In this document: positions 27,450 to 50,513 of the stretch, piece after piece | Numbering within the stretch: the stretch's first letter is position 1 | Layout of the letters: the number at the start of each line of letters is the position of its first letter | NCBI RefSeq assembly: GCF_033153115.1 | Contig: NW_026889755.1 | Coordinates: 3,224,001 to 3,288,000 of the forward strand | DNA length: 64,000 nt | Direction: 5' to 3' | From: Saccostrea echinata | Taxonomy: Eukaryota | The notes under the pieces: generated by a model | Told to the model about the DNA's origin: nothing | Database searches by the model: none | Seen by the model: the letters and a program-made list of their open reading frames with translations, nothing else | Position numbers and translations under genes: made by a program

Positions 27450-27686
27450 TTGATTTAGCACATGGTAAAACTTCCTATCAGACTCTAAGTGCTCCTTTGG
27501 ATCCACAAGACCCAACTCGGTTTATTTCAAGCAATGCAGTTGATAGAGACCCATCCTCCTGCACACGGAACTATGAAATAGGACGAACCTCCCCACACAC
27601 AAGTGTACTTTGGAGAGTTAACTTGGGTGATATCTACAGTATTTACAGTATCAGGATACTTTTCAAAGACTATGGCTCAGTATACG
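27450..27686 (+). CDS. Gene B exon: first half of the F-type lectin/galactose-binding-like domain
   Basis: ttttaag| ... |gtatat, 237 nt, phase 1-1; DLAHGKTSYQT...SSNAVDRDPSSCTRN...LWRVNLGDIYSIYSIRILFKDYGSVY, which fits the NLA/AVD/WxVDLG pattern of F5/8-type-C/FTP folds. Confidence 0.88.
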
Positions 27687-29038
27687 GTATATGTTTTTTT
27701 ATATATAAATCATAAGCTTTTACCTAGTCTCTGATGTTTGTCTTCATTGATTCCATATTTTTGTGATTTTAAAAAAATAAATATCAAATTAATCAAAGTT
27801 AAAACTATAATGAATGAAAAAAAAACTAACGATTACCTTGTGTTGTGCGTTCCAAATAATTTACAAATAACGGAAGAGAACCTATTTAGATTATTTCCAT
27901 TAAAAACTATAGTTTCTCTTTTTTCTTTTTCTTTTCTTTCTTTTTTTGGGTTATTTTAGTCATACAAAAGCTAAAAATACAAACTTCAAGTGATGTGGTC
28001 ATTAGTTTTGGGAATATCCAGAAAAGGTGCTTGCTAAAAAGTTTCCTTTGTAAAAGTTGTGATGATTCCAATTATTAAAATTTATTTACTTGCACCATAT
28101 GTCCTATTTCAGACATCAGTGTACGCAACGTAGTTTGAACTTTATTGCCCTTTTCCCTGGAGTTGAAGAGTTCCAATACTTAAAGAAATTGTGTGCTACA
28201 TTTTAATGTCTATATATGCTGTTGTACACTTCTTCTAAAACAAGTTTGGGTGAAAAAAACATTTAGAATATATGTATAGTAATTTTTGTATATTTTTCTT
28301 TGAATTATACAAGAATTTTTATCAATTGATATATTTCAAAACCCCTGGTAATGCAGGCTGATTTTTTTGTCTTCGAACATCTGATGACACTATATTTTTA
28401 AATTAAGAATATCTTGAAAAATTATCAGTAGGTAAGGTACGTTGCGTATGTCCTTAAGTAGAGACTTAGTGCTTTCATTTCCTATGAAAATGGTTTCCTC
28501 TGAAATTCCAGGTATTGAAAATAGGCTTTGTGAATTTGCAATTTTCTAATTTTTTTCAGGAAACAGGTGTATTCGAGTACCTCCAGGAAAAAATTAAGAC
28601 ATGAGCACCCTCTCCTAAAAATAAAATTTGTTTTGTAATCTTCAGAAACAGTTCTATCATTACATGATTGCACACTTTGGATCAAAGGTTGTGCTCTATA
28701 CAAAATATTGAAAAGCGCCTTGGAAATTTGGTCATTTCTGAAGAAATTTTCAGGAAATGGGAATGTTGACGGAATTAATGACATTATGTATTGACGAGTG
28801 AGAAAATTGCGTCATTTACAATAGAAATGCTTTCGACAAGGGCCAAAGTGATATTTGATGCACTGTCAGCTAAAACTAAGCAATTTTGATTTTTCAGAAA
28901 TTCACAGGGCCTAAAATATAGCTGCCTAAACTTTTAATAGACATTCAAGGAGCTAATAATGTCAACGCCTGTCATGACACATGACCTAGGTTTATGAATT
29001 TTCATCCGAAAAAGCCACAATTTTCTCACGAAAGTATC

Positions 29039-29381
29039 ACCGTTCACAGTAGCTCAGTCGGTGGAGCGCTCGCTCCGTGATCGGGAGGTCGTGAGTTCGA
29101 ATCTCGGCCGCGACTGACCTAAGTCGATAAAAAAATGGGTAGCAATTTTTCCTTCGCCATGCGCTCGGCACTTTGAAGTGAAAGTTGCTGGTCCTTCGTA
29201 TGTTACCTTAAAAACTGAGGTCCCGTGTCACGGCAGGCGTTGGCACGATAAAGACCCCTCACTACTCAATGGCCCTGAGTGCCGAATAAAGGTCGAAATT
29301 TGAAGCCCTTCACCGGTCTATGGTGACGTCTCTTTATGTGTAAAAAATTCTCGAATGGGCGGTAAAACAACATACAATCAA
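29039..29381 (+). mobile_element. Full-length tRNA-derived SINE
   Basis: A box TAGCTCAGTCGG, B box AGTTCGAATC, core AAACTGAGGTCCCGTGTC and a CAAT tail; 13-bp TSD tca(c/t)gaaagta(t/c)c. Confidence 0.9.
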
Positions 29382-30155
29382 TCATGAAAGTACCGTGCGT
29401 TTTACAAAAAGCAGTTACGTCATATTTTTATTGACTGAGGTTTGTTGAAGAGACCCTCACAAAGCATGCTGTCTGTCAAATATTGAACGGTCTCCAAAAT
29501 GAGAACAAATTGTTTGGGGGGAAATCTTATTTCGCTTTTTTCTTTCCAGACAGGTAACATTAATTTCGTTTGGAGAAAATGACGTAAAATCGTTCGTATG
29601 GGACATCTTAAATACGTTAGATCACAGACGAAAATGAAAAAAAAAACTGTCCCTCATCCTCCTCTTTCTCTTTATTACATTTCTCTGTAACATGCACTTC
29701 ACATTTCCACACTTAAAATTCGTATCGAATTTTGTTTAAATGTAAGGAAATTTATATTTATCCAATAATAGCTTGTGCATGTAATGAATGATGGTATAGA
29801 ATATTCGATCTAATGTAAAATTTAAAGCGCTAACTTACTTCACTGTTAAATATTCAAATCGATGAAATTGTAGTATTTTCTATTTATCAAGTTAAAGCAA
29901 GGCTTAAAATACACTTGCCAAGGACGCAGTCAATCGGATAAAGTAATACCATGACTATTCTTAGTGTTAATAGGCGATAATACTCCTACTTTGTATTGCT
30001 AGCATGTTTGTCATCGGCTACGATATTAAAATGAAAAAGTAGCATTATGATGGTTTAGGAATTATTGACTGCTTGATTTCCTGGTAGTAGTAGAGATTTG
30101 TTTATGCATATAGCAGATAAATCACATTAATTCTTATTTTAAACAAATTCTTCAG

Positions 30156-30395
30156 AGAAGCGACAAAGAGGACGATTTGCGGGATTTTCCATTCATATTT
30201 CAAACTCCACCGATAGAGACAATTGGTTTCTTTGTTACAAGGACAAGTCTGGGTTACCCCCCTTGGATTTCAGTACCACATGCATGAAACATGGTCGTTA
30301 CGTCATTTATTACAATGAAAGATTAAAGAACATTACCTATCCTGTTGGTTACCAAACTACAATCATAACAGAGTTATGCGAAGTGATAGTGCATG
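30156..30395 (+). CDS. Gene B exon: second half of the lectin-like domain
   Basis: ttcag| ... |gtaagc, 240 nt, phase 1-1; KRQRGRFAGFSIHISNSTDRDNWFLCYKDKSGLPPLDFSTTCMKHGRYVIYYNERLKNITYPVGYQTTIITELCEVIVHG (GRYV and LCEVxV motifs). Confidence 0.92.
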
Positions 30396-30442
30396 GTAAG
30401 CAACTTCCTGTACGTCTGTCTTGTTGATGGTTTGTAAGTATT

Positions 30443-30466
30443 TGCGTGGACCCTGAGGTCCACGCA
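30443..30466. repeat. GC-rich 10-bp-stem hairpin, probable end of a rolling-circle-type repeat
   Basis: TGCGTGGACC-CTGA-GGTCCACGCA; the element assignment is inference only. Confidence 0.5.
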
Positions 30467-32516
30467 GAAAATATATAAGCGGGGTTTAACCGGATGCCAT
30501 GGGCTTACGTCAGGCTACGCCTGCGCAAGAATGCTAGAGAGTCTCTAAAACAACTTAATTGCCCTTAGAACAATTCGCCCTTTACGAATTAGAATATGCG
30601 AATCATTGGCAAACCTCGCTCTAAAATCTGCACATCGTATTTATGTATTCTTTGGCGTAACCAAGATCCGAATTTCTCTTTTATACATATATCCTTATAA
30701 ACAAACTAAATTCTATGGTACAAGCATTTTAAATAAGTAGGAAGAACTTATATAGATAACTTAACAGCTTGAACATTGTTGAACTACTAGGCTTTAAAAG
30801 CTAGTTTTTACCATGTTAACCGGCATTAGTTTTGTGCATCAAGGTTCGCAAATTAAATTAATAGACAGCAATCCAAATATAGCTTGATAAAGGCCTGTAG
30901 CAACGTGTTTCCATGTGGGGGAGAGGGAGAAACATAAAAAAAAATCTGCGTACTACAAATCTGTGCTACACGTGTACCATCTTAGAATGTCATCCGGATA
31001 AATCTAGTACAGATGTCAACATGGTCAAGTCCCAGCCGTTATTGGTTACATGTATCGAAATAGCCCGATTTTTTTAATGACAAAACTATAGACCATACAA
31101 TCGGGGATAAAATTTAACAATTTTGCTATGATAGTACAACCACTCAAAGTAGACAGATCAATGTAGAAAATGTTAACGAAAGGATAACCTGTGCCATTTT
31201 TCAGAGTAACCAATGAACTCGTCTATGGATGCTTTGACGGCCGTGTTAACAAGAATAGATGTGGGTTACTCCGTATCCAAGATATTCGACTTTTAATTTA
31301 CTCCAATTTTCACTAGAAAAAAAAAAACTGCACATGTTATGAAACTGGTGTATAGTTCTTCATGTCCGTAGCAAATACTGTCACAAGTCTAAGTGTCACT
31401 AGAAAACAGTGAACACACCTGTGCTTGCAAGACCAAATAGCCTAGGTCTACACACGTGCGATGAGATCTTCTCAGACCTTTCTGGCGAGCTCGGAAAAAC
31501 ACGACGTTGTTTTGCCGAGAAGTTACGATTGCATATGTTAATTATTCCGTTATTTAAAAAGAGACAGAGGGAAAAAAACACACACAAAATTAACCTTTTT
31601 CGGATTTTAAATTGATCGAGTTAATCGATAACCTAGCATCGCTTTAGATAACTCGAGTGCCGAGACCCTCTAGTTCTCCAGGGTGGGTTTTTTTCTCACA
31701 CCGCATACAGGCACTGAAATTCAAGCCCGTAGCAACGGTTTTCAAAGGGGGCAACCTCCAAAAAGAGTTGACAAGCAAAAATGAATAAATAAATAAATAA
31801 AATAAAAATAACAACCTGTGCACCACACTGTAAAATCCTATTTCGGGGGGGGGGGGGGGGGGATAGGCTTCGCCTAACTTTTAGGTACATTTTGATTTCT
31901 TTTAAATGTTTGACTTTCCGTATTTTGAACCTTCCCGCAACAAAAAGTGCGGGAGAGCTTCCAATGCAAATCAAAACTAATAATATATTAAAATTATAAC
32001 AAAAGATTACTTTTTAAAGAAAAAGTGAGCCCCCCTCCCCCACATACTACGGGGACATTTTGAACCTTTCTCTTCGTTGCTTAAAATATCCCCATAATAT
32101 AAGGAGATAAATATTCTCTTCTGGCTATGCACACTTTTTAAAGTTTGTTACTTTAGAAGATGGACCAAAAATGGCATAGCCGTACGTTCGCCGGAATCTT
32201 CCGATGATAACAAAGTGAAATCTTTCATGTTACGTGTGAGTGGTCGAGGCCCGGGGCCGGGGTTGTGAAGGTACACGGAGGAAAGCAATAAGCAAAACGC
32301 TATCTAGAGAGCAGAAAGGGCAGAGATTGAAGTACTTATTTTATTTAAGATAGTAGCCTAAAAATATCTATATTACATAAAAAACATTCTCTCTCTCTAC
32401 CTCTTTCTGCAAAAATAAAGGGGGTTCCAACACCCGCAACCCCTCCCTCCCTGGATCCGCCAATGGAGTTAAAATTCAACCATTACGATACCTGCACGCT
32501 TAAGCCTCTTTTAATT

Positions 32517-35500
32517 CAATCTGATTAAAATCAGATCTTTGTTACGCTCTGAAATTCTGATGGTCGCTGTACAAAGATCTGAAGACATCCCATTGAGGGT
32601 CCTGTCAGAATGAACTTTGTATAAAGTTCACGACCTTATACTAGCCAATGAAAATTTATCTCTTCCGCCAATCAATGATCGGGATATATAAGGGGTATGG
32701 TCATAGCGTAAACATGGCGAAATAAGAACGAAGTGGGTGAAGTGCAGATCGGTTCTTTGTATAAAATGAAATAGCGAGTTAATTATGTTTCATGTACAAG
32801 CAGAAATGCAGAATTCTACTTCCGATTGGTTATGGGATGTCACTCTCTCAGCTGTTGCAAGTCTATGGCGTGTTGTCCCGTTGTGACACTCAAGACGGAG
32901 CACCAGACAGGTGACAGGTCAACAAAATATTTTATCGAGGTAATGATGATAAAGGTCAATCTAGAAAATCTCACACGAATTTTTTTAAATAATATATATT
33001 GATCTACGGGCTTTACCTGAATCTTGGGGATTGTCCGATGTCAAAGGCAGTCATAAGTGAAAAGAACATATTGCATTTTAAAAACAAAGTGAATGTTGAC
33101 ACAAGTTACAAGTTGCATTTAGACTAGCATTTTCATAAAAAACAAGGTATCTTACACACAATAAATGTAGCATTAAAAAGAAAAATGTTATGTTTCTGAT
33201 TAAATTTCATTAATTATGATACTTGATTTGTAGTTCAATCTTATTTTTATAGTTCTTCTCACATGTATTCATTCTTTGTCTGGTGTGTATACATTACCAC
33301 CATAATCCTTTTTTTGCACCACTGTCCCATAGGGCCTGTCAGTCAATAAAAATTGCAGACCCCCTCCCTAAAATTCTAAACCCCCCTGGCACATCAAAAC
33401 ATTTTTGAACTTTCATTGTTTAGCATACACAACATGTCAGAGCTTTCTAATTAAAATTTACATACTTTGTTCAAAATTCTTTAAGATTTCCTGCAACACT
33501 GCTCCATCAAACAAATCCTTTCTATGTGTTACTTTCTAAAATAATCCCAAGAATTTATCCCTTCCAGCAGCTTAAATTATTCACCTCTGTTTATATTTAC
33601 AGCTAAACATACATGGCATAAAAGACACTAAAGATTGTTATACTTATTTCTGATTACAAATAAAAATAGTTATTGCTGTTGTTGAAAATAATATTTGTAG
33701 CATCCATTTCAACCCCCATCATTTACTTGTTTTTCATTGTTTCAGGGAGCAGCGAAAATGATGACAGACCCTGCCAGGCTCTGGTTTTTCAAACTAAACC
33801 CATTGATATTCAAAACCATTTCTGTACTCAAACATTATTCCTGTGTTCTCACATACCACGGAAGACAATGAACAAGAAAGTTGTTATACCTGTATTGTGC
33901 ATGTTTTCCCCCATTTTAAGCTTGGTGGACTGTCAGGAGAACTATTGTCATATCAATCAAAGTATATCTATAGACAGTGGTAAAAAGTTAGACAGTAGCA
34001 AAAAGTTAAAGTTGTTTATTTTCAAGAAACTCCAATTTGTATTAAAACAGACTTGCATCAATGAACATTCATTGTTTAGAATACATTCTACAATCATCAC
34101 ACATGTCCAATGGGAACTGGAGAGACAAGTATGCAATAAAAGAAAGTATACAATTTGCATTTTTTTTTTGAAATATATAATTGTAATAAAAAGTTTTATG
34201 AATTATGTTTATCATTACTTATTTAATATTATAAAATTCAGGACTATAATGGCTGCTGACACTGGTGTGATGATTTTCTTTTCATTTTAATCAGAGACAG
34301 CTAATGAAAACACATTCAAAATTTCAAGACAATGAGGGCATACATATTTTTTACTGCTTCAAAGTAAAGATCATTATGTCTTTATGTTCCTTTTTTTCAT
34401 AGGAAGGAATGCTGTCTTTTCTAACTCAGCTTTTCTACTTTTCTTCTTGAACCAGATGTAGACCACTGATACAGGAAATAGAGGATACTGTGTTTTCATT
34501 TCCCACACAATGGCACTGTATACAGTATTTTGGAGAGCAGAGGTTAACATGGCAGACTTTTCTCCACAAAAATAATGCACAGTGTCAGTCACCTAAAAAA
34601 TTTATACATTCTACGTTATTTCAAGGAACATTCAGCATGTACAATGTATTTAAATTTGCAGGTTAAATTAATAACATACCTTACACCCAGTTAGCATGAT
34701 ATTTAAACAAAAAGTGTGGGTGTGATACAAATGCCCCACCAGGATCCATGTTTTAAATACTTAAATGTACCTCAAGGATGTGAAAATAATGAACGTAGAT
34801 GAGACAAAAGTAGAATATATCATTTTGCTGCTCTTATTTTCTTGGGTCATTTCCTGACTTATAATTTACAAGGACATCATAAAACTATCGTGACAGAAAA
34901 GTGGTAACATAGTCACTGTGGAGGCTAAGAGAATACAAATTTACTTAATATCTTGTCAATGAGTCACATAAAAGTAAGGTCATTTTTAAGTGTGTGTGTG
35001 TGTTTGTTTTAACTCCACAGAACAGGGAAAAAAACAAAATCAGGAGTTCTGAAATTGATTCTTTTGGTTGGAATGGCCTAATTGATATATCAATTTTAAG
35101 ACTTTACAAATGATAAGTAGGTGTATGTGAAAAATTATTACATTTTATAGTATGTGCACCACAAACCTTCCAGTCCTTTCAGAAATTCTTGCAGGCATGG
35201 TGATAAGTCAGCTAATGTGTCACTTACAACATTAATAATAACAAACATGAATTAAACAAACAATATGTAAGTTTAAAGTACTTTCTATTTCAATTTGAAT
35301 TTGTTAGGATGAGATTAATTAAAGAATGAGAATGGGGTAAGAATTACAAAAACAGAAGTAAAAAAAAATTAAAAGCTTGCACATTTTTTTTTTGTTATGA
35401 AGTTTTATCTTTAGGGGTGACTGTTGTGTCATTATAATAGGAAGTACGTGTATTTAATCATCAAAACAACCGAGGTGATTTAGATGATGTACATGCAAGC

Positions 35501-36011
35501 TTTAACAGCTGTTTAGACAATTTTGTGAACTCTGTAATCGTAACTCATACGAAAAAAATTTCAACATTAAACTTACATTTCCATCGTAGATCTGACACCT
35601 GATCTGAAGTTTTCTCGCATTGTTTTTGGAATCATGACCATCTCAAATTTTCTGCAAACTTTCAGAGTCGGAGGGAACACACACATATTGCACATCTATT
35701 AAAATCTTCCGTATGGTCACTTTTCCTCCACTGTTTATATTTGTTTGCATCCATATCGATCAATAAACAACGCAAATGTTGCTCAGATGAAAAATTTCAA
35801 CAATGTCATGGGCGCCGCCATTGCGTATTTTCGGAACTCGTTTTCTTCGGAATGTTTCGCGTAAAGCACATCCAAAGAATCTGCCAACGGCGTTTTCATT
35901 GGATAATCCAAAGTTCATTCTGACGTGACCCTCAATGGGATGTCTTCAGATCTTTGTACAGCGACCATCAGAATTTCGGAGCGTAACAAAGATCTGATTT
36001 TAATCAAATTG
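32517..36011. mobile_element. 3.5-kb DNA transposon derivative with ~100-bp TIRs and a perfect 9-bp TSD
   Basis: TIRs CAATCTGATTAAAATCAGATCTTTGTTACGCTC... (32517-32619 and 35909-36011); CTTTTAATT is duplicated at 32508-32516 and 36012-36020. No intact transposase ORF. Confidence 0.92.
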
Positions 36012-36140
36012 CTTTTAATTCTGTTGTTAATTTTAAAGGCTACATTACAATTGTGATAGATACCTAGATCAACATTTCATATTCATATCATTTTTTATCA
36101 TAACAGCCTAATTAAGCAGACTTAAAAAATGATGCACCAC

Positions 36141-37763: not shown

Positions 37764-37803
<40 letters not shown>

Positions 37804-39126: not shown

Positions 39127-39184
<58 letters not shown>

Positions 39185-39208: not shown

Positions 39209-39343
39209 CAGAGTATAGATTTTACATTACGTTCTCTTTCATTCTACTTATTGCTCGATTGATAACCAACCAATATGAATATTGACATTAATTTGATATT
39301 CATAAATACTTTCGTCTAAAAAGTTCTTTATTCTGTTGAAAAG

Positions 39344-39481
39344 GTTGTGCTAAGAAGAGAGTTTATGGTCTTAACTGTGACCTACCCTGCTCTGTGAACT
39401 GTCAAGAACATAGCTGCAACATAGTTAATGGAACATGTCTGGGATGTAAGCCAGGGTGGACAGGCGACAAGTGTGATAAAT
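39344..39481 (+). CDS. Gene B exon: EGF-like repeat 1
   Basis: aaaag| ... |gtatgg, 138 nt, phase 1-1; CAKKRVYGLNCDLPCSVNCQEHSCNIVNGTCLGCKPGWTGDKCDK. Confidence 0.92.
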
Positions 39482-40047: not shown

Positions 40048-40188
40048 TGTGCCCTGTTGGATGGTATGGAGTTGGTTGTCAACACAGATGTGTTGGACAT
40101 TGCCAACACAACGCCTCCTGTCATCATGAGTCAGGCAGTTGTGTAGACGGTTGTGCTACGGGATGGATGGGGCCCTTATGTAACAAAG
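40048..40188 (+). CDS. Gene B exon: EGF-like repeat 2
   Basis: aacag| ... |gttaag, 141 nt; CPVGWYGVGCQHRCVGHCQHNASCHHESGSCVDGCATGWMGPLCNK. Confidence 0.93.
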
Positions 40189-41009
40189 GTTAAGCTATTC
40201 CCTTGTATTTCAAAACCATTTTCATTTCCATAGTTTTTTCTTTATAAAATCAATATATCTGGGGTATCTTTTTTTATAGTTGCCCAGTACCTTTCGCATT
40301 CAAAATCTCTAATCAGTGAACATTGTGCATGTATGAAACACTGCAAGAAGTCAACAAACATATTTCCATTCTTGTGTTTGATATTTTAATATTTTTTTTT
40401 TGTTGATGACACATCTGCTTCCCACCCTTTTAAAAGGATGGCTTAAACTAGATCACATGAGGAAGTATGAAAAAGATAAAGACAGTGTTAGTTTAAAGCT
40501 TAAAAAACACTGACTTAATATTTCAAAAAATTAAAAACAACTTTCTAAAATGAATAATAGTGATGATGTCACAACACTCGATATTGATTGGTTTTCCTAT
40601 ACAGATATTTCATTTCATATTATTTTGTATTCGTGATGTCATACTCGTAGCGAGTACAGTACCAACCAGATATAACCTAACTGAAAGCGGACTGAAGGCG
40701 AGGACAGACCGGGGTTCGCTTCCCGTGTTTGCTTGGGGTTTGCTCATGGTCTGCATGTCTGAATCTGTTATACACTTGATTATGTGATCTAGTCTGAGTC
40801 AATCAGATAGCTGTGAGCAATAGAGAAAATACGCGAGTAAATCAAGCAAAAATAAAGAGCTGATAACAAAAGCAATCCGATCGTAATAAAGGCTAAATGG
40901 AACAAAAACCATTCAATAAATAAATCACTAAATAGATAAATAACCGTTTTTTAAATCAAAATATTATGTATATTGTACAATGTACGTCTTTTATTTAATT
41001 CAACTACAG

Positions 41010-41150
41010 AGTGTGAATATGGAACCTATGGCCAAGGTTGTATTCATAAATGTAGTGGAAATTGCTTGAATAGTTCTCACTGCAACAAAACAACAGGCAA
41101 TTGTGACTTGGGTTGTAGTCCTGGGTATATAGGATCTTTCTGTAATAGGA
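41010..41150 (+). CDS. Gene B exon: EGF-like repeat 3
   Basis: tacag| ... |gtaggt, 141 nt; CEYGTYGQGCIHKCSGNCLNSSHCNKTTGNCDLGCSPGYIGSFCNR. Confidence 0.93.
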
Positions 41151-41274
41151 GTAGGTATTAGTAAGCATATTATGAATTTATCTGCAATTACTACATCGGA
41201 ATTAACCCAATATACATCAGATCTTCCTATTTCTCCATTTTTTTAATAAATAATTTTGAATATATTTTTGACAG

Positions 41275-41415
41275 TCTGTTCTATTGGAAAGTTTGGAATC
41301 CATTGCAAAGAGACATGTAGTGGTCACTGCTTAAATGACACAAATTGTGATCATGTAAATGGAAGTTGCAACAAGGGTTGTGACAATGGATATACTGGTG
41401 ATGGGTGCATCAAAT
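41275..41415 (+). CDS. Gene B exon: EGF-like repeat 4
   Basis: gacag| ... |gtaaga, 141 nt; CSIGKFGIHCKETCSGHCLNDTNCDHVNGSCNKGCDNGYTGDGCIK. Confidence 0.93.
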
Positions 41416-42308
41416 GTAAGAAATACACAGGAGTATACTTAATGTTTTTAACATTTTTGCTTAATTTCCACAAATTTAAATGAAAATATATATTTTAACA
41501 CATCATTATCTTTTTATCCATCATTTATATGTAGCTTGAAAAAAAGCCATACTTATTTGAAAAAAAAAAATCCAATATTCTGGATTTTAGTAATGAAAAA
41601 AAAATTGGTCACGTGGTACTGTGACATCATAAGTGTCATTCATAAAATAAACTGATCATAAGGATAAACAAATTAAATAGACTTGGTGTTTTAAACATTA
41701 TCTTCACAGGAAAATATAACAAGCATTTAAACTCTTCAGAAAATGAAATAGAATGAAACCAAGGAAAGTAATAAACGGATTTTGAGCAATAATCATTTTC
41801 AATATTCCAGTTCGAATATTTTCTTTCATAGTCTTACCCATTCTTAATTTAATACAATATCTATATTAATTTAAAGTTCTCAAGATTGCTAGAAAAATTC
41901 TTCCCTCTTTAAGGAATGTAAAGAAAAATCTTCTCACATTCCTTTATGTGAACCTTTCTGTGTTCAAACGCCGTACAAGACATGTTACTAACTGTCAAAA
42001 ATCTAATTATTCCCAATCTGTTTGTTAATGGGTACATTAGGTGCAATAATTGATTTCATTCAAAACAATTCTTTCGCTTGGCCAGATATGAAACATATGA
42101 CGTCAGAACACTGGTGCAAAAACATTTCATTTTACTATACATATTGTAATATTTAAAATTTTGAATCTCTGAAATTTTTTTTTACCTTATCGAAGAAATA
42201 TATACTGATTTAGATATCATGTAAATTTTCACATGTTCTATAAAGTAACTGAAATGAAATAAAAACCTTTATAGAATTTTTTTTTCTCTATTTTCTTATT
42301 TGATTTCT

Positions 42309-42549
42309 CCCTACGTCGCGGGTTCGAATCCCACTGTGGGACGTGGAGACCGGTCCTTCGGATGAGACCGTATAAACCGAGGTCCCGTGCCGCAGTAGAT
42401 GCTGGCACAAAAAAGATCCCTCACTGCTCAATGGCCGTAAGTGCCGAGTATAGGACAAAATTTGCAGTTCTCCACCGGCAAGTGGTGGCGTCTCCATATG
42501 AGTGAAAAATTCTCGAGAGGGACGTTAAACAACAAACAAACAAACAAAA
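42309..42549 (+). mobile_element. 5'-truncated SINE specific to paralogue B with a perfect 14-bp TSD
   Basis: Matches 3197-3425 closely and has an (AAAC)n tail; CTTATTTGATTTCT is at 42295-42308 and 42550-42563; absent from paralogue A. Confidence 0.93.
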
Positions 42550-42666
42550 CTTATTTGATTTCTTGATGTTACTGTTGATTATAAATTATGTGTATTATAT
42601 GGATTAAATAAACATGTATTGTATATTGATGTATATTTAGTAACTGAAATCTAAAATTTGTTTCAG

Positions 42667-42804
42667 CATGTGAGAGAGGCTTGTTTGGCCCTGATTGTTC
42701 ACAAAAATGCTCAATAAATTGTCACACTCCTAATGAGTGTACAATCACCGATGGGTCCTGTGTGTGTTCTCCTGGCTGGACAGGGTCACCACACTGCAAC
42801 AAAG
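42667..42804 (+). CDS. Gene B exon: EGF-like repeat 5
   Basis: ttcag| ... |gtaatt, 138 nt; CERGLFGPDCSQKCSINCHTPNECTITDGSCVCSPGWTGSPHCNK. Confidence 0.93.
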
Positions 42805-42937
42805 GTAATTTTGATTTTAAAAATGTAATTTACTGTCTCATTTTTTACAGTTGCCTGCAGGATGTATGGAGTAGTACCCTAAAGAATTGCAAGATTTCTC
42901 AAGTACATTTTTGCATTTTTCATTGCTTTGATACATT

Positions 42938-43970
42938 CGCAAATCTGTTAAGGCTGCATAAAGGGGGCGGGGCCTAAATTATAAGGGAAATGCTTACTGT
43001 GACATCACACATAAATAGTAATTCCTCACAATAACAGAAAATGAAATAATTTGCGATTTTAAACTGCATAAGAGTAATAAACTACATCAAAACTTACCAC
43101 TGCATTCATTTTTATCGCTAGTTAAATCCCACAAAGCAAGATATAAACAAGTCACTGATCGCAATGCACTTGTTGACATGTCGTCATCTTGGTAAAAATT
43201 GACGCATTTTATGTGCAGTGAGAGGCGGATCAAGTAATTTCTTCACAGTGAAAAATGCAAATTATTATTAAACAGAATATTATTTGCAAATGTTAGGTAG
43301 ACCATTAATACAAATCCGATACCTTTGTTTAGTGCCATTATTTAAAAACTATCGAGAGAATGTATTGAATTAATTCTACTGTGTTTTTTGTACAGGGTTT
43401 GCATGTTTCACGCCGCGTTGCTTCATTAAATCACCTTTTCACAAGGGCATACACTTTATAGATCTTGACCATTTTTTAAATATACATAATGGTTACATTT
43501 CTTAACTTGAAAAGTGCTGCTGCTTTCCTGAAATCGAGAGGATTACTTAATAAATACATAAAATACTATGTAAAGGTCACACATATTTCGACTAGAGCGA
43601 AATAACTTGAAATTAAACTAATAAGATGCGAATTCTATTTAAAGCAGCAGCACTTTCCATAAACTACAACTTATGTAGAAACAATTTATTACTTAAATTT
43701 TTAATTTTAACTAGGGTATGCCCTTGCGATGTTGAAATGTGTTCATGACCTACATACAGTACACATTACATACATTTATCACGTGACTGTCAAATAACGT
43801 GGCCAAACCAAATTCCATACAGAGCAGCGTATACAATGTTGTTTCAATTAATATTAAAGTCATGTGATAATATAGTAGCTTCTCAAAAATAAATTCAGTT
43901 TAAAAAGGTATGTATTTATGCACGTTCATATTCCATTGATTTCTTCGTAGTACGCCTTAACAGAGCTGCG
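42938..43970. mobile_element. MITE, CGCRGC-N3-GTTAAGG family, TT TSD, specific to paralogue B
   Basis: TT-CGCAAATCTGTTAAGG ... CCTTAACAGAGCTGCG-TT; internally homologous to 13819-14818; absent from paralogue A (~6020-6030). Confidence 0.85.
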
Positions 43971-44481
43971 TTTATTTTTTTACTGATCCTCAAAGATCGA
44001 TCTTAAGTAAAAAGAATAAAACATTGATTAAATAGAATGTTTTTCTCCAAAAAGGATTTTCTCAATAGCAAATCTAGCATTTAATTTTATGGAGATTAAA
44101 TCAAGTGTTATGTTTTGTACGAACGAAATTTAATTACAGTTATTCGTGTTATTTATATTAAGTATAATATAAAACATAACATATACTGCTCTATATCAGG
44201 ATATTTGATGTATATCTTGATAATAATACTAAGATATAAGACTGACTTGGATTTATTTATGTATTTGTCATCGTTTCTGATTTGGTGCGATGATTGTTCC
44301 CCCTTGAAAATCGCACAATGAATTACTATTTTGGTTGATGTTCTATAATATACATAATATAACTACTATATTTGTTGAGACCCTGACATAACCAATACTT
44401 TGATACTTTAGTTACACTGGATCATTGAAACATTGCCCTACTATAAAACTTTACTCTAAAACATTCCTGCATTAACTTCAG

Positions 44482-44610
44482 AATGTGATGAGGGATTTTA
44501 CGGAGAGAATTGTCACGCACACTGTAGAGATTACTGTATCAATGCTACGTGTAATAGAACTGATGGTAATTGTTTGGTTGGATTCATCAAAGGAAATACT
44601 TTTGAGAAAG
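44482..44610 (+). CDS. Gene B exon: membrane-proximal partial EGF repeat
   Basis: ttcag| ... |gtgagt, 129 nt; ECDEGFYGENCHAHCRDYCINATCNRTDGNCLVGFIKGNTFEK. Confidence 0.93.
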
Positions 44611-47078
44611 GTGAGTTGGTTTTAATGATTATTTGATAAACTTCATTTAATCCTAAAATTTTAAGTGGTTGAAACTTCTTCTCTAGAGACAAAATTTCTT
44701 TAAGGAATAAATGTTTTATCAATTGTTCAATACTGTTTACGTATTTCACTTGGCTGTGTATTCTTTTTAGCGCTTTTGGCGGAAAGTTGCTTGCAATTCA
44801 AACACAATGCTATATGTCTTGCACATATGAACATAAATAAGAACATTAAGAAATGCGCTAAATCAAACCTACACTAACTTGTTCGAAAATCAACTTCAGC
44901 CAATATCGTATACGCTAAATATAATACATTTACAGTATGTGTTTACCATCCGTCTCTATATTTATTCATCCAATCATGAAAAGAGAATTGATATGATATA
45001 AATATATAGGCAAAAGATTCTTGTTGCTTAATGTTTGTATGGGCCGATGTCAGGTATAAATGTATAGGAGTTCACTTCAGACTATAAAATGGTAAGAACT
45101 AAAGGCCTGGGATAGGTTTTAATCTTTACCAAAAATTATCCATTCCGCTCCGGTCGATGACTTTAGGCTATATCTATACACGTATGTAATAATAGTTTTC
45201 TCAAACATTGTTTTAGTCTTAGTCAACGCTCTTAGTAGGTAGAGATAGGAGGAACATTTGGAATGGTCAGCAGATGCAATTTGAGTTCATTACCTCCAAA
45301 TATCATTTGATAATTTTGTGTACTTTTCATTATAATGGTTATGGCAAGTTTAAACTGCCTACTCGATTTCTGGTTACTTAACAACAAACATTCTTGGAAA
45401 TAATAAAATTATCTAAAATTTACAATTTTAAGATGAGACATGAAGGAGTAGTAGCTGACGTCAATATTGAGTTAAACTGTATATACATTATATGACATGT
45501 AATTGTCAATATCTTGACCACAAATAATATATTCTAGCTCAATTATCCAGACAAGCGCTTGTAGGGCTGAAAGAATAAAAGCACAGACATTGTCTTCACA
45601 TTAAATTCTAAGGTAAAGGTATTTATATCCATTACAGCTCTTTATTGCAGGGAAAACCTGTTTCTAATAACAGAGATTGAATTATTCTAATTCAAGAACA
45701 AACCTTGCAATAAAGTTCCGATTGATTGCAGATTAATTAATTACACAAACTATACTATTTACATCCTCTTTATACACAAGCCTCTTCTTCAAAAAATAGA
45801 TTAGATATTTTCTTAATGGGAGAATTTCAAACAGTTAAACTGTGAGATCAATTGCCTTTAAGCAATTTCTTTTTCTTTTTTTTTTTTAGTTTTACTTGAG
45901 ACACATTTAATTTAATTTCTTTAATAAAATTTGTCAACTTTTATGAAGAAAGTAATCATTTTAATTCAAAACTTAATTTCAAAGTTTATGACATTTTAAC
46001 CCTGGGCCGTACGCACTATCTGAGACCTTAAAGGACCGTAATTTTTACAAAAAATTATTAAGTTAAAACAATTTAACCAAAACCAAATTAAAGTATTCTG
46101 ACTTGGATTTCCATAACAAATATTTTGGTATACAATACATATATAACGCCATTCAATTTGACAAAAACTTCATTGAGCACGATCTTTATGGACAAACCCT
46201 CGTATAGATATAAAATAAGATGTAATCAGATATGATGAATAAGGATTTGCTGTAAAATTATTCGACTCAGTGCATGCGTTATTTTTCAATAAGAACGCTT
46301 TGTCCATGGTTTTACTGGGCATCCCTAGTATATACATATATACTTTTAATGGTTATATCATTATTATCTCGTTAATTTTGAACCTTCTAGTGGCGTAAAT
46401 GCAAGTTCTGCGATATCACAAAGTCAATTAAAAATTTGGAACATATGATTTCAAGCAAAATACTGGTTTCAAAAACATGAAATTAATTTAAAATACAGTC
46501 GCTGCATTATGATTATCATGACGCTTTGGAACATACTGACCATCTAAGGAAAAATTCCCACCATCTCATATAAATTATCTAGATCGTAATATGAGTCCAC
46601 TTCACGTTCCAAGATCTGAAGTATTTGATCATTTCATCCAACCTTCATCACAAAAAACTCAAGACGGTGATGTTATCTATTCAGAACATGCTAAATACCT
46701 TAGTCTGAAGAATGTATGTTTTCTTTCTTCTTGTATTTTATAGCTGACGATTTTTATTAATTTTTAATTTCTTTTTATTGAATATTATCGTTGAGGTATC
46801 GCTAAGGATTGTCTATTAAAATAAAGTAGCTTATACATGTATGTATATTTTTACCATATTATTTTTATTCTATGCACTTTATGTTTAGACTTTTGCATTA
46901 GCGTGCTAGTTAGAGTATAAGCAATTTTAGTTGAGTTCTGACCTTCGTGAAACAAGAAAAATATTTCAGGAACTTAAATTATGTAACTCTTGACTTTTGC
47001 ATTGATGGAAACGTGTTTTGAGTGTTTCTTGCTCTATTTTACCAATCTCTGCATTAGTACCTTCTCTTTAAGTGATTA

Positions 47079-48995
47079 CAGTAAAACTCAGGTATAAAGA
47101 ACTCGCTAATAAAAAAAAAATAAACTTTTTTCGAATCCCTAGAAGACTTTTCAGTATGTTCCTTGTATGGATATAAGGAAACTCGGTTGTAAGGAAGCAA
47201 AAGAACTGCGAACGATAGTATTGTTCTCCCGCCTACCTCCAAGTCAATTTTCAAAAGTTAACACATTTGAATAATTTTTCATATTTATATAGGTATTTAT
47301 AATTTTTCATAAAACATTACCTATTTAGGAAAAGAAAGAAAAATTACTCTATAATTTTGGTAAAACTTGTGTTTTTCACTATAGAAATCAACAGAAAACA
47401 TTTTCAAAACATCCCCCCCCCCCAGTGAAACCAAAATTCCTTTTTAAAGGTAATATGGATTGTTGTTTCACAAATTCATACCAAAGGTTTTTGTGTTTCA
47501 CGGGGGGACGGGGGACATATATTCACAGACAAAGAGGGACACAAATGCTCATTTATTCACCAATTTCGAAGGGGTTTACAACTTAAACATTGTATTTTAT
47601 CAATTACATATGTTTAATTTTATAGGCGTAAAACATAAAAAAAGATTTAAGAAACATTTATTCATATCCAAGAATTTTTTAAAATGTGCTGATGCTTTCA
47701 AGTCCGATTCTAATGGAAAACATCGCCTACCCCCTTATTAAAGGAGCTGGAACTAGGAGTACGCAGCTAGGTTAAGGACTCCCATATACATGTCAGCCTG
47801 TGCAGAGGTTCGGGAAAGCTATTATGACGTCACGTTAAAACAATACAAATGAATCTCGATGAATTAATAATATATGTTCTTTTTAAAACACACTAAATAC
47901 TTTCGTTTCTCATAATTGAGATAAAGATAAATGGATGTGCAACTTATCTTGCCATAATAGCACTTAGCGTTTGCAGAATGAAAGCCAGCTTGATCTCGCT
48001 ATACTTACTGAGATGACGTCATTTCTCAGTTTGACACGCAGTTTCTCTGTACTTGAGGCGTGGATCAAGCTTTTATCGTAGCTTGTAAAAATAAAAATAA
48101 ATACGAAACATGCGTAGTCGGACAAAAAGAGAGACATATTCTGAAATATATTAATCCACATTTTATTGTCAAACTAAATTGATAATATGTAGACTTATAA
48201 TAAAGCCGTAGGGAGCACATTTGTACAGTAACGTGCTAGAATGACAGGTCCAGCCCCTCGAAAATATCAAAAGTTCAACGATATCCGCTTTACTATCAAT
48301 TCTGAATTTTTAAACACGTTTAGCTTTTATTCCTACTACTCTGAAAAGTGCTGGGAGCTGGTTGTGCATTGTTTATTTATTCCGTAATCTCATATTATTC
48401 CAGTGCGTATTACATTTTTGTCTGGAGTTTCTAGAAAGACAGCTAAATTTTTAACAATTCTCGAGCATGAGGAAGTTGCTCCCAGCACTTTTCGGGTTAA
48501 GGAACTTGTCTCAAAGAAAATAAAATAAATTTTATAGCGGAAAGATGCCCGTATATCGTTGAACTTTTACGATCTTTGTAGTTGTACATATATGGTCCAA
48601 TTTTAAACCTGTCACGTGACAAACAGCTGATGTAAGCGATGTCACTTTGGCCGAACTCAGCAGAGACCCGATATATACAAATGCAAAGACCAAAATTCAC
48701 ATTTATCGAAACCACTGCTGTTAAAAAAATATTAAAAATTGTATTCATTTCCCCTGAATATATAAAGGCGTATATTTCATGGGCGTCCTTAACCTAGCTG
48801 CGTAATTAACTATTTAACACTGGTATTAAAATTATTAATCAATTACCATACAACTCTTCTTTGCATTCAACAAAGATTTTATGGCTAAATTGCCATTAGT
48901 ATTGAATTAAATGGATGTAAAATGTAGGCTGGAATCGAGAGTTAGCGTGCGTAGTTCTTTGAGAATCCTGTGACTTTTTTGACTGAATTTTACTG
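47079..48995. mobile_element. Pogo/Tigger-like MITE split by nested insertions
   Basis: TA-CAGTAAAACTC... left end and ...GAATTTTACTG-TA right end; the right end is also present in paralogue A (~8780-8793). Confidence 0.45.
47762..48802. mobile_element. MITE, CGCRGC-N3-GTTAAGG family, TA TSD
   Basis: TA-CGCAGCTAGGTTAAGGACTCCCAT ... ATGGGCGTCCTTAACCTAGCTGCG-TA (24-bp TIR, 1 mismatch). Confidence 0.9.
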
Positions 48996-49728
48996 TAGAA
49001 GTTACAATGTATGGACGCCGTCTTTTCAGTGAGGAAAAAATTAAAAGAATAGGCGGCTGCTTCAGATACAAGTGACTGAGTTTATATTCTAAAAGTGTTG
49101 ACACTGTTCCAAAAAATGTCTCAAGTTTAGGAAGACTAATTTTCCGACAATGTTACCTTCGTAACATTTATGAAATTTCATCATCCATTTCAGCTTGGGA
49201 TTACTGTATCACTCTGAGACTATTTTCCGTTCTAAAGTTAGGATGTATCCCTAGAAGAAATAATCCAATCCATAAAACACTTTGGCTTTTTTTAATCTCT
49301 CTCACCCCCTGTACTTTTGTGCTAACATGGTTTTCCTTATTTTCATAGATCCTTACTATGAGAGTCTTTCTAAAGAGTCAGCAATTTTGTCCATTTTTTT
49401 ATGTTTACATCGTTCGCAAATGAAAATGACTCTCTACAAACTTGATTGATTACCATTGACGTAATGTTTTTGCCTTATAATTAACCTTTGTTTGTTGTTG
49501 TTGAAAGGAAATATCTGCACGTTTCGTAATCATGCCAGTACATGAAAAAGTCCTGTTCAGTATCAGTGCATAATAGTGTTATGAATGTTATTAATTGTAG
49601 GATATTACTCGACCGCGTTTTGTAGAAGTAAATATAACTGATTATTTCTTATTATGTTAAACTGAAAAATACCAGGACATGTGTAACAGTCATTGAAAAG
49701 AATATTTCAAAATATTTTCCATTTTAAG

Positions 49729-49840
49729 GGGAAGACAGAAAACCATTAGAATCATATAAGAAAGAATATTACACAGTGGGTGGCATTTTGGGAGCAATGG
49801 CAGTCGTTGCGATTGCGATAATTGCTGTATTATTTATACG
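49729..49840 (+). CDS. Gene B exon: transmembrane helix
   Basis: ttaag| ... |gtactt, 112 nt, phase 1-2; GEDRKPLESYKKEYYTVGGILGAMAVVAIAIIAVLFIR. Confidence 0.92.
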
Positions 49841-50238
49841 GTACTTATTTACACTTTTATTCTTACATTTAGCTTTTAATTTATTTAGTCAATTTAATTT
49901 AAAAGATGCTTACTGAAAAGTAAAATTATCCTACTCCATTAATAAGATTTCAAATTTACAATAAATTTTGACATTACAGCAAGACAAAATATCGATCAGC
50001 ATCAGTAATGAGTGAATATTTACAATAGGTAGCTTGCATTCTTGATTAAAAAAAAAGGGGGGGTGGAAAGATGTAAAATTCTCGAATTGGACGTAAACAA
50101 CATACAATCAGTCATAAATGAATATGTTAATAAAATAAAAAGAAACACATGTAATTATTTATAAACTGACGGCAATTGTGAAATTATGCAGGCAAAAGAA
50201 TTTCTTCTCATTACACTAGTAGTTACGCAATCATTTAT

Positions 50239-50293
<55 letters not shown>

Positions 50294-50296
50294 AAG

Positions 50297-50513
50297 TGGA
50301 AGGAAAACGTTCAGCATCTGCAGAATGCCAAAAGATCGGAATATTTCCACAGAAATCGATGGAGAAGAAGGAGGACATTCAGATGCAAATAAAATTGTAC
50401 AAAAAGACACAATCTTGTATCAGGAATTGCATGTGATTGAAAACGAGAGTGCATATCAGGAACTACATTATGAGAAAAACCCTTATGAGAATCTTGAATC
50501 AACTGTTAATTAA
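50297..50513 (+). CDS. Gene B terminal exon: cytoplasmic tail with three YxxL motifs
   Basis: T-tract-gaag| phase 2; GRKTFSICRMPKDRNISTEIDGEEGGHSDANKIVQKDTILYQELHVIENESAYQELHYEKNPYENLESTVN*. The ten exons total 1634 nt and stay in frame throughout. Confidence 0.92.

What the first reader, a model, noticed from the sequence alone, without database searches (positions are those of the whole stretch)
27450..50513. Lectin-like + EGF stalk + TM + triple-YxxL receptor, invisible in the ORF track as a whole gene
Seen in sequence: ten GT-AG exons splice in one frame to about 544 aa, giving an F-type-lectin/galactose-binding-like head, 5.5 EGF-like repeats, a TM helix and a 72-aa tail. Established: MEGF10/Draper/CED-1 use an EMI head and signal through tyrosine motifs, and bivalves have expanded 'MEGF10-like' genes. 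Inference: this is not a MEGF10 orthologue but a glycan-sensing, tyrosine-signalling immune or phagocytic receptor from a tandemly expanding family.
Basis: partly seen in the sequence, partly recalled or inferred. Interest (0 to 1): 0.75.

Follow-up and report, generated by a model that had tools for sequence, protein, structure and literature searches.

The report
Oyster lectin-head EGF tyrosine-tail receptor
This is an oyster gene for a cell-surface receptor with a lectin-like head, an EGF stalk and a tyrosine signalling tail; it is one of more than a hundred tandem copies, and its head is almost identical to that of a neighbouring tyrosine-phosphatase receptor.

Summary
The ten exons are real. 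All have AG/GT borders and compatible phases. The upstream tandem paralogue repeats them one-to-one (10 of 10) and the downstream one repeats A-H (8 of 8). Summed dN/dS is 0.32 and 0.42. One RNA contig uses the predicted borders of the TM and tail exons, but joins the TM exon to an unpredicted upstream exon that carries an in-frame stop.

The head (exons A+B) models as a galactose-binding jelly roll closest to F-type lectins and discoidin-type modules (Z 17-18). It lacks the fucose-binding His. The stalk is five 8-Cys EGFs plus one 6-Cys unit. The tail has YQEL-x8-YQEL-x6-YENL, no NPxY, and the head has no EMI hit, so this is not a MEGF10/Draper orthologue.

The public model (XP_061170724.1, "protein draper-like") is a chimera of two neighbouring genes and skips the TM exon.

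The genome holds at least 124-150 head exons, mostly in two arrays. Interspersed are 24 closely related phosphatase exons. The downstream paralogue, with a head 90-95% identical, is a receptor tyrosine phosphatase.

The scan reported this family and this head-sharing before, on other DNA of this genome (s1-803080, s1-803136). Ligand, expression site and signalling remain inferred.

The parts
21769..21820 (+). Candidate signal-peptide exon (MLKLLLLSFGFKRTFAY plus one base; an upstream ATG at 21730 is also open). Unproven.
   Evidence: It is the only + strand site in the 64-kb window that fits the pattern: Met, hydrophobic core, [AGS][YF], then a phase-1 GT donor. The - strand gives 3 such sites as background. 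Most of the 55 family N-termini listed end in ...AY or ...GY. No counterpart was found in the fetched upstream DNA of either paralogue.
27450..27686 (+). Exon A, first half of the lectin-like head.
   Evidence: AG/GT borders, phase 1/1. Pfam PF22633 E 0.032 when scanned alone. 124 matches in the own genome. 100% identical to P0001 residues 151-228.
30156..30395 (+). Exon B, second half of the head (RQRGRFAGF ... ELCEVIVHG).
   Evidence: AG/GT borders, phase 1/1. At least 150 matches in the own genome, with 150 of 422 candidates scored. 98% nucleotide identity to the phosphatase-tailed downstream paralogue.
39344..39481 (+). Exon C, EGF-like repeat 1 (8 Cys).
   Evidence: PF00053 E 1.6e-4. Borders conserved in both paralogues.
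40048..40188 (+). Exon D, EGF-like repeat 2 (8 Cys). Skipped in the public model P0001.
   Evidence: 85% and 91% aa identity in the two paralogues.
41010..41150 (+). Exon E, EGF-like repeat 3 (8 Cys). Skipped in P0001.
   Evidence: PF00053 E 0.0024. Borders.
41275..41415 (+). Exon F, EGF-like repeat 4 (8 Cys).
42667..42804 (+). Exon G, EGF-like repeat 5 (8 Cys).
   Evidence: PF23106 E 5.9e-6. Borders.
44482..44610 (+). Exon H, truncated EGF-like unit (6 Cys) plus linker.
   Evidence: No read depth in either run.
45571..45612 (+). 3' end of an unpredicted exon that one RNA contig splices to exon I. Its 5' limit is unknown. It has TAA in frame just before the donor.
   Evidence: Joint 45608(+4) to 49725(+4), GT..AG, 38 letters on the short side, 1 contig, depth 4.7. 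Frame read.
49729..49840 (+). Exon I, juxtamembrane stretch plus transmembrane helix (GILGAMAVVAIAIIAVLFI).
   Evidence: Kyte-Doolittle mean 2.93 over 19 aa. Acceptor and donor are both used by X1 contig record 7. 78% aa identity in the upstream paralogue.
50297..50513 (+). Exon J, cytoplasmic tail with YQEL-x8-YQEL-x6-YENL and the stop codon. A run of about 50 T lies just upstream of the acceptor.
   Evidence: Motifs. The contig resumes at 50304 after 7 unplaced letters. 11 matches in the own genome.
5791..11285 (+). Last four exons (G 5793-5927, H 6552-6677, I 10259-10366, J 11070-11282, given as in-frame codons) of the upstream tandem paralogue. Its head lies before the window.
   Evidence: tblastn gives 78%, 71%, 78% and 82% aa identity to G, H, I and J. 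Borders.

Best explanation
The locus encodes a type I single-pass membrane receptor of an oyster family expanded to well over a hundred genes.

Architecture. A short signal-peptide exon is inferred, with a candidate at 21769-21820. Two exons then build an F-type-lectin-like jelly-roll head, and six exons build a rigid stalk of MEGF/laminin-type EGF units. One exon gives the membrane helix. The last exon gives a 70-aa tail with three YxxL that form two overlapping ITAM-consensus motifs.

Proposed mechanism (inferred, not shown):
- The head binds a multivalent ligand on a particle or cell surface through the variable loops around a conserved Arg-rich loop (RQxGR). Canonical fucose binding is unlikely.
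- Clustering lets a Src-type kinase phosphorylate the tail tyrosines.
- A tandem-SH2 Syk-type kinase then docks on them.

Neighbouring phosphatase receptor. The gene 106 kb downstream carries an almost identical head on a receptor tyrosine phosphatase. The same ligand could therefore engage a phosphorylatable receptor and a phosphatase receptor, giving a built-in set point. The gene is a mosaic: its head exons were recently homogenised with the phosphatase gene, and its tail with the upstream paralogue.
For: Gene structure:
- Borders and phases.
- One-to-one exon conservation with AG/GT at the same places in two paralogues.
- dN/dS 0.32 and 0.42.
- RNA contig using 49729, 49840 and about 50297.

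Head:
- PF22633 lies above its cut-off in 3 of 5 full-length homologues.
- phmmer of the head-only homologue P0106 against PDB gives F-lectin 3cqo at E 1.4e-4 and the lectinolysin lectin domain at 0.0072.
- The AlphaFold model of P0106 has pLDDT 81 and pTM 0.77. Foldseek gives 3cqo at E 5e-9 and VIA gives Z 17.2.
- This gene's own head, inside public protein P0001, models at pLDDT 72-96. It gives Z 17.9 to 4zy9, 17.5 to 3cqo and 16.9 to 1k12.

TM helix and tail motifs.

Tail conservation. Of 47 family proteins with a TM and a tail, 46 have at least one YxxL/I and 28 have Yxx[LI]-x6-12-Yxx[LI].

Plausibility of the pathway. An oyster ITAM receptor that binds CgSyk has been reported (PMC6994640, passages).

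Phosphatase neighbour. PTP exons colinear with P0186 residues 349-839, including the VHC|SAGIGRTG signature, follow the downstream paralogue's TM exon. PF00102 hits 5 of 8 exon translations.

Mosaic history:
- Head, this gene against the downstream paralogue: 7.0 synonymous differences per 103.2 sites, against 41.0 per 158.8 in the EGF exons (Fisher p 7e-5).
- Tail exon J, this gene against the upstream paralogue: 2.5 per 40.8, against 60.7 per 207.2 (p 6e-4).
- Exons A and B are 94% and 98% identical in nucleotides, against 40-56% in the flanking 200 nt.
Against: - No signal-peptide exon is proven.
- The only spliced contig reaches the TM exon from an exon with an in-frame stop. At least one transcript form therefore cannot encode the full receptor.
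- Exon H and everything 5' of it has no RNA support here.
- The two runs are only guessed to be RNA.
- The fucose-binding His is missing and no ligand is known.
- Two of the three tyrosines also fit the ITIM consensus, so the sign of the signal is open.
- dN/dS of tail exon J against the upstream paralogue is 1.5, on very few sites.
- The public model omits D, E and the TM exon. I cannot tell whether that omission rests on RNA.
Confidence: 0.55

Rival explanations
1. It is an inhibitory receptor. The tyrosines act as ITIMs that recruit SH2 phosphatases, so the receptor dampens activation.
For: ILYQEL and SAYQEL fit [ILVS]xYxx[LVI]. Many family tails keep only one YQEL followed by YQNT. The scan's own first-reader note s1-816163 says the same.
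Against: The spacing of 8 and 6 residues between YxxL motifs fits the ITAM consensus YxxI/L-x6-12-YxxI/L given in PMC6219719 (passages). 28 of 47 family tails keep two motifs at that spacing. The family already holds members with a fused phosphatase, which would make a second inhibitory class redundant (inference).
Confidence: 0.2
2. It is a self, gamete or cell-adhesion recognition receptor and not a microbe sensor. The expansion would then reflect mate, kin or tissue recognition.
For: Oyster F-type lectins (bindins) work in sperm-egg recognition and diversify strongly (PMC5712786 and PMC12221842, passages). The head loops are the most variable parts of the family. No tissue expression is known for this gene.
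Against: In C. virginica, genes named draper-like, MEGF-like and receptor-type phosphatase are reported as enriched together in circulating agranular haemocytes (PMC13070813, passages). I could not check that those genes belong to this family, because supplements are closed.
Confidence: 0.15
3. It is a decaying or non-productive copy, transcribed but not making the full receptor.
For: The one spliced contig carries an in-frame stop before the TM exon. No proven signal exon. The family holds copies with stops: 4 of 124 exon A matches, 5 of 150 exon B matches and 3 of 11 tail matches.
Against: All ten exons are open with intact splice sites. dN/dS is below 1 against both neighbours. The head was recently homogenised with an intact gene.
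Confidence: 0.1
4. The public model is right: a soluble or tail-only 'draper-like' protein of 543 aa without a TM helix.
For: P0001 / XP_061170724.1 exists as such.
Against: - Its first 149 residues come from the upstream paralogue. Residues 1-61 match L019 at 100%. The rest was read by eye.
- Residues 1-60 model as disorder, pLDDT about 30.
- It starts inside a head domain without a signal peptide.
- The RNA contig includes the TM exon that it skips.
Confidence: 0.03

Closest known systems
Draper / CED-1 / MEGF10 / PEAR1 engulfment receptors
   Same: Single-pass receptors with a stalk of 8-Cys MEGF/laminin-type EGF repeats and a short tail with an ITAM-type YxxL pair. Public annotation names this family after them.
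   Different: No EMI domain; the head is an F-lectin-like jelly roll. No NPxY in this tail, and only 1 of 47 family tails has one. The family is expanded to over 100 tandem copies.
F-type lectins (eel AAA 1k12, striped bass FBP32 3cqo, lectinolysin lectin domain)
   Same: Same fold, with Z 16-17.5 and rmsd 2.1-3.4 A over 131-144 residues. Weak but significant sequence similarity.
   Different: The His of the fucose motif is replaced by a variable residue, and the RxDx4R segment is replaced by a longer K..D..RQxGR loop. The domain is membrane-anchored through EGF repeats and not secreted. Discoidin-type chitosan-binding modules score equally well, so the fold alone does not fix the sub-family.
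Vertebrate paired immune receptors (Siglec-5/14, CEACAM1/3, KIR, PILR)
   Same: Two neighbouring genes share an almost identical ligand-binding head kept alike by conversion, and carry opposite signalling ends. For the vertebrate examples I saw only listings and abstract starts of PMC4042635, PMC5112662 and PMC2211832.
   Different: The counter-partner here carries its own phosphatase domain and does not rely on an ITIM. The head is a lectin-like jelly roll, not an Ig domain. Function is untested.
Oyster CgIgR (Ig-domain ITAM receptor that recruits CgSyk)
   Same: [quoted passage not shown] This shows that the pathway exists in oysters (PMC6994640, passages).
   Different: Five Ig domains in place of lectin head plus EGF stalk, and a single gene studied. 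No relation by sequence was tested.
Oyster lectin-head EGF-stalk receptor tyrosine phosphatases (earlier scan finding s1-803136; public proteins P0186, P0202)
   Same: Same head and stalk family. One such gene lies 106 kb downstream, with a head 90-95% identical.
   Different: This gene ends in a 70-aa tyrosine-motif tail in place of a phosphatase domain.

Membership tests
MEGF10 / Draper / CED-1 | N-terminal EMI domain | tested here: not met
   No EMI hit on exons A or B at E up to 1, nor on 5 full-length homologues at E up to 0.01. The head is PF22633-like. A six-frame genome search with PF07546 found nothing anywhere, controls included, so it says nothing either way.
MEGF10 / Draper / CED-1 | Stalk of atypical 8-Cys EGF repeats, one TM helix | tested here: met
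   8 Cys in each of exons C-G and 6 in H. PF00053, PF23106 and PF23301 hits. TM Kyte-Doolittle mean 2.93.
MEGF10 / Draper / CED-1 | NPxY motif in the tail (CED-6 binding) | tested here: not met
   None in exon J. 1 of 47 family tails has one. The motif is as named in PMC6219719 (passages).
F-type lectin domain | F-type jelly-roll fold | tested here: met
   On this gene's own head: Z 17.5 to 3cqo and 16.9 to 1k12. These tie with discoidin-type modules 4zy9 and 4zxe at Z 17.6-17.9.
F-type lectin domain | Fucose-binding motif H-x24-R-x-D-x4-(R/K), as defined in PMC5712786 (passages) | tested here: not met
   The His aligns to the residue after the invariant Gly (Arg in this gene; among the most variable columns of the family alignment). 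The R-x-D-x4-R spacing is broken by an insertion. Only the last basic residue is clearly kept.
F-type lectin domain | Binds fucose or another glycan | not testable with these tools
   Needs recombinant head and glycan arrays.
ITAM-bearing receptors | YxxL/I-x6-12-YxxL/I in the cytoplasmic tail | tested here: met
   YQELHVIENESAYQEL and YQELHYEKNPYENL. Consensus as given in PMC6219719 (passages).
ITAM-bearing receptors | Tyrosines phosphorylated and bound by a tandem-SH2 kinase | not testable with these tools
   Biochemistry is needed. Oyster Syk is reported in PMC6994640 (passages).
Paired receptors | Near-identical ectodomain on genes with opposite signalling ends, kept alike by conversion | tested here: met
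   Head exons are 90% and 95% aa identical (94% and 98% in nucleotides) to the phosphatase-tailed neighbour. Synonymous divergence is 7.0/103.2 against 41.0/158.8 in the EGF exons, p 7e-5. Flanking introns are 40-56% identical.
Paired receptors | Same ligand, same cell, opposing outputs | not testable with these tools
   No expression or binding data for either gene.

The most novel reading that the evidence does not exclude
Oysters run a large germline-encoded paired-receptor system. Arrays of more than 100 lectin-head/EGF-stalk genes intersperse tyrosine-motif (ITAM-like) receptors with receptor tyrosine phosphatases. Exon-limited gene conversion keeps the ligand-binding head of a kinase-recruiting receptor and of a phosphatase receptor nearly identical, so each ligand is read by an activating and a dephosphorylating partner. 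This would be an invertebrate counterpart, built from unrelated domains, of the KIR, Siglec and CEACAM paired receptors. This locus is the second place in this genome where such a pair is seen.
Probability: 0.35. Interest if true: 0.8.

Novelty: new variant of a known kind. Interest (0 to 1): 0.6.

Why it matters
Annotation and transcriptome papers file these genes as "MEGF10" or "draper-like". That name imports an apoptotic-cell engulfment function the head does not support.

Three results follow from this work:
- The head is an F-lectin-derived domain with an altered binding site.
- The public model of this gene is a chimera that loses the membrane anchor.
- Tyrosine-tail and phosphatase-tail members share heads.

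Together these turn an anonymous expansion into a testable hypothesis about how an animal without antibodies sets activation thresholds for many ligands.

The work also gives exon maps for re-annotating over a hundred genes that appear in oyster disease-resistance expression studies (PMC9892467 and PMC13070813, passages).

Tried and rejected
Signal-peptide exon:
- Hydrophobic-ORF scans gave several weak candidates.
- blastn of the candidate against the paralogues' upstream DNA gave only chance-level matches.
- The one conserved upstream island (15615-15845 against L017:4913-5119, 75%) shows no ORF with a start codon and hydrophobic stretch in any frame; by eye it looks like an interspersed repeat, not an exon.
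- A family-based pattern left a single + strand site at 21820, which I keep only as a candidate.

EMI search of the own genome. It found nothing, but its controls found nothing either, so it is uninformative.

Pfam on single exons. Exons B, I and J gave nothing and A only E 0.032. The head family became clear only on full-length public homologues.

Downstream paralogue tail. I first read a degenerate tyrosine-less tail from the frames after its TM exon. I dropped that reading when colinear phosphatase exons appeared.

Extra RNA-seen exon. Its sequence is conserved in the upstream paralogue's intron only at the level of other intron flanks, 75-80%. There is no sign that it is a conserved coding exon.

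Literature. Searches found no paper that describes this head-stalk-tail architecture or the head sharing. PMC4346834 has no occurrence of MEGF, F-type, discoidin, FA58C or ITAM in its main text. Only the held library was searched. Supplements were closed, so I could not check whether the 'draper-like', 'MEGF' and phosphatase LOC ids in the tables of PMC13070813 and PMC9892467 are members of this family.

Taxon range. The 68 hits that carry a name are all from Ostrea, Crassostrea/Magallana and Saccostrea. That search needs shared 5-residue words, so absence elsewhere is not shown.

Full report
Observation. The window is AT-rich animal DNA (GC about 0.29-0.40). Each has an AG acceptor and a GT donor in compatible phase. 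A to H are phase 1 on both sides, I ends in phase 2, and J starts in phase 2 and runs to a TAA. Whole codons add to 534. With nine split codons the product is about 543 aa, before any signal peptide. Exons C-G hold 8 cysteines each and H holds 6. Exon I holds a 19-residue stretch of Kyte-Doolittle mean 2.93. Exon J holds YQEL, YQEL and YENL. Each was handled alone.

Is it more than chance? The window's own genome (G000, 923 Mb; the window is C6:3224001-3288000) holds two flanking tandem paralogues on the same strand.
- The upstream one (C6:3200365-3235282; its last four exons lie at window 5.8-11.3 kb) has all ten exons in the same order. Exon-length matches are 57-85% identical.
- The downstream one (C6:3358043-3389800) has A to H at 64-95%.
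- AG and GT stand at the same places in 10 of 10 and 8 of 8 exons.
- Summed over exons, dN/dS is 0.32 (B-J, upstream) and 0.42 (A-H, downstream).
- In the upstream paralogue the B to C intron is only about 300 bp, so no further head exon is hidden in the 8.9-kb intron here.

RNA. Only two small runs of one study held any words of the stretch 40900-50899. Their kind is a guess. I laid them on 44514-50513.
- One 313-nt contig of X1 (depth 4.7) covers 49725-49840 and 50304-50455. Seven unplaced letters lie between, beside a skipped T-run. This fits donor 49840 and acceptor 50297.
- The contig enters exon I through a GT..AG joint that, shifted by 4, is 45612|49729. The borders of I and the start of J are therefore used in RNA.
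- The partner of I in this contig is an unpredicted exon ending at 45612, whose last full codon in the frame of I is TAA.
- Exon H had no depth in either run.
- This supports one junction. A second junction was replaced by another form. Seven were not tested.

Existing annotation. phmmer of exon A against 1.84 billion representatives gave 220 proteins at E up to 0.001. The best was P0001 (543 aa, 100% over residues 151-228). One search names it XP_061170724.1, 'protein draper-like [Saccostrea echinata]'.
- Its residues 1-61 are exon B of the upstream paralogue.
- Residues 150-401 are exons A, B, C and F of this gene.
- By eye, the rest is exons C and H of the upstream gene, then G, H and the last 53 residues of J of this one.
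- It skips D, E and the TM exon, and it has no signal peptide.
- In the model its first 60 residues are disordered, pLDDT about 30.
The gene is therefore not unannotated, but its public model is a two-gene chimera without a membrane anchor.

The head.
- Alone, exon A gives only PF22633 (F5_F8_type_C_2) at E 0.032, and exon B gives nothing.
- Five full-length public homologues give PF22633 above its 27.8-bit cut-off in 3 of 5 (35.7, 31.2, 28.6; the others 27.4 and 22.8).
- A natural head-only homologue, P0106 (42% and 63% identical to exons A and B), hits the F-lectin FBP32 (3cqo) at E 1.4e-4 and the lectinolysin lectin domain at 0.0072 by sequence.
- Its AlphaFold model (pLDDT 81, pTM 0.77) matches 3cqo at Foldseek E 5e-9 and at Z 17.2 (rmsd 2.1 A, 139 residues).
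- This gene's own head, modelled inside P0001 (pLDDT 72-96 over residues 150-310), gives Z 17.9 to the discoidin-type chitosan-binding module 4zy9. It gives 17.5 to 3cqo and 16.9 to eel agglutinin 1k12. These rows are tied.
The jelly-roll fold is therefore met. The F-lectin sub-family is the best sequence match but is not exclusive by fold.

Binding site. The F-lectin fucose motif is H-x24-R-x-D-x4-(R/K) (PMC5712786, passages).
- In profile and pairwise alignments the His falls on the residue after an invariant Gly. That residue is Arg here, and its column is among the most variable in the family.
- The R-x-D-x4-R segment is replaced by a longer loop, consensus FKDY..YE.RQxGRFAGF, whose last Arg aligns with the last basic residue.
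- Over 66 family heads, the core strands and the RQxGR loop are nearly invariant. The loops at P0106 positions 33-42, 57-67, 90-96, 112-118 and 160-165 are the most variable.
- I infer a conserved basic pocket ringed by diversifying loops. Canonical fucose binding is not supported.

Stalk, membrane anchor and tail. The EGF exons hit Laminin-EGF, Teneurin-EGF and PEAR1-like EGF models. The tail fits the ITAM consensus twice (YxxI/L-x6-12-YxxI/L, PMC6219719, passages), as YQEL-x8-YQEL and YQEL-x6-YENL. The first two tyrosines also fit the ITIM pattern. There is no NPxY.

I examined 73 family proteins with a crude hydropathy rule.
- 47 have a TM and a tail of at least 20 aa.
- 46 of those 47 have at least one YxxL/I, 28 have an ITAM-like pair, and 1 has NPxY.
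- The 26 others are fragments, mis-models or phosphatase forms, and were not counted.
- Tail exon J itself has only 11 matches in the genome, 3 of them with stops.

Family.
- Exon A has 124 matches in the genome (150 of 151 candidates scored; 4 with a stop).
- Exon B has 150 matches (150 of 422 candidates scored; 5 with a stop).
- Most lie on C6 at 0.08-3.6 Mb and on C27 at 10.8-13.2 Mb, nearly all on the + strand.
- Public relatives with a name are all from Ostrea, Crassostrea/Magallana and Saccostrea. Their names include MEGF10/11/6, draper-like, PEAR1-like, Tie-2-like, tenascin-like and 'uncharacterized'. Two carry a phosphatase domain (P0186, P0202).

The phosphatase neighbour.
- Beyond its exon H come a TM exon and, on the same strand, exons colinear with P0186 residues 349-839 to its end (C6:3395506-3418541). 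They include ...VHC|SAGIGRTGT.
- PF00102 hits 5 of 8 exon translations, in order along the profile.
- The next head exon is on the other strand, at 3440-3442 kb.
- That gene is therefore a lectin-head, EGF-stalk receptor tyrosine phosphatase.
- Its head is the closest relative of this gene's head, at 90% (A) and 95% (B). The next best in the genome is 65% (A) and 81% (B).
- Synonymous differences are 7.0 per 103.2 sites in A+B, against 41.0 per 158.8 in C-H (Fisher p 7e-5).
- Exons A and B are 94% and 98% identical in DNA, while the 200 nt on either side align at 40-56%.
- Conversely, tail exon J has 2.5 synonymous differences per 40.8 sites against the upstream paralogue, compared with 60.7 per 207.2 in B-H (p 6e-4).
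- The gene is thus a mosaic, with recent, largely exon-limited homogenisation of its head with a phosphatase receptor and of its tail with a tyrosine-tail receptor.
- The catalytic phosphatase exon has 150 matches in the genome (150 of 198 candidates scored). The 24 best (85-100% identical) all lie inside the same two arrays, 15 on C6 and 9 on C27, all on the + strand.

Mechanism. Shown: the exon structure, the domain folds, the motifs, the family size, and the mosaic relation to a phosphatase receptor. Inferred: ligand binding by the head, clustering-driven phosphorylation of the tail, and docking of a Syk-type kinase. An oyster ITAM receptor that binds CgSyk is reported (PMC6994640, passages). 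Also inferred is an opposing role for the phosphatase partner. In C. virginica, 'draper-like', MEGF-like and receptor-phosphatase transcripts are reported as enriched together in circulating agranular haemocytes (PMC13070813, passages). 'MEGF10 family' transcripts also differ between Perkinsus-tolerant families (PMC9892467, passages). Whether those are members of this family I could not check, because supplements are closed.

Comparison and novelty.
- It works like Draper/MEGF10 in stalk and tail, but fails two of that family's defining features (EMI, NPxY).
- It has the F-lectin fold, but fails the fucose motif.
- It resembles vertebrate paired receptors in head sharing, with a fused phosphatase in place of an ITIM partner.
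- My literature searches found no description of this architecture or pairing.
- The scan itself reported the family and the pairing before, on other DNA of this genome (s1-803080, s1-803136).
- I rate it a new variant of a known kind, of moderate to high interest. The gene is ordinary within its family. The family-level reading is the interesting part and remains untested at the bench.

Noticed in passing
window 56295-60273, - strand: A fragmented LTR-retrotransposon-like element. Four separate ORFs hit PNMA/gag-like (E 1.3e-7), gag aspartyl protease (2.1e-5, below cut-off), reverse transcriptase RVT_1 (2.8e-29) and RT RNase H (2.9e-8). The coding region is split over several frames. Described only.
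   Followed up: partly
window 50227-50296 and 11060-11069: A run of about 50 T lies directly before the acceptor of tail exon J. The upstream paralogue also has a T-run before its acceptor. The reads tool skipped this stretch as a repeat.
   Followed up: no
window 47114-49113: Many short contigs of both runs pile up here, inside the H-I intron, at word depths up to 126 and with many differing letters. This looks like a dispersed repeat and not like part of this gene.
   Followed up: no
window 15615-15845 and L017:4913-5119: A 238-bp stretch is shared at 75% between the upstream regions of this gene and of the upstream paralogue. No ORF with a start codon and hydrophobic stretch was seen in any frame; I read it by eye as an interspersed repeat, which was not tested.
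   Followed up: partly
window 16549-16740: A run of 192 N (assembly gap or mask) lies between the two tandem genes. Left alone.
   Followed up: no
G000:C6 0.10-3.63 Mb and C27 10.88-13.23 Mb: 24 phosphatase catalytic exons, 85-100% identical to one another's translation, lie interspersed among at least 124 lectin-head exons, all on the + strand. That is roughly one phosphatase-tailed gene per five heads.
   Followed up: partly
G000:C6:3431043-3441756, - strand (L022, L023): A further family member lies in the opposite orientation just beyond the phosphatase gene, with head exons at 3440206-3441756 and EGF exons at 3431-3439.6 kb.
   Followed up: no
window 61649-62338 (+) and 33673-34290 (+): Two long ORFs (229 and 205 aa) have no Pfam hit at E up to 0.001. 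The second lies in the B-C intron and is low in complexity.
   Followed up: partly
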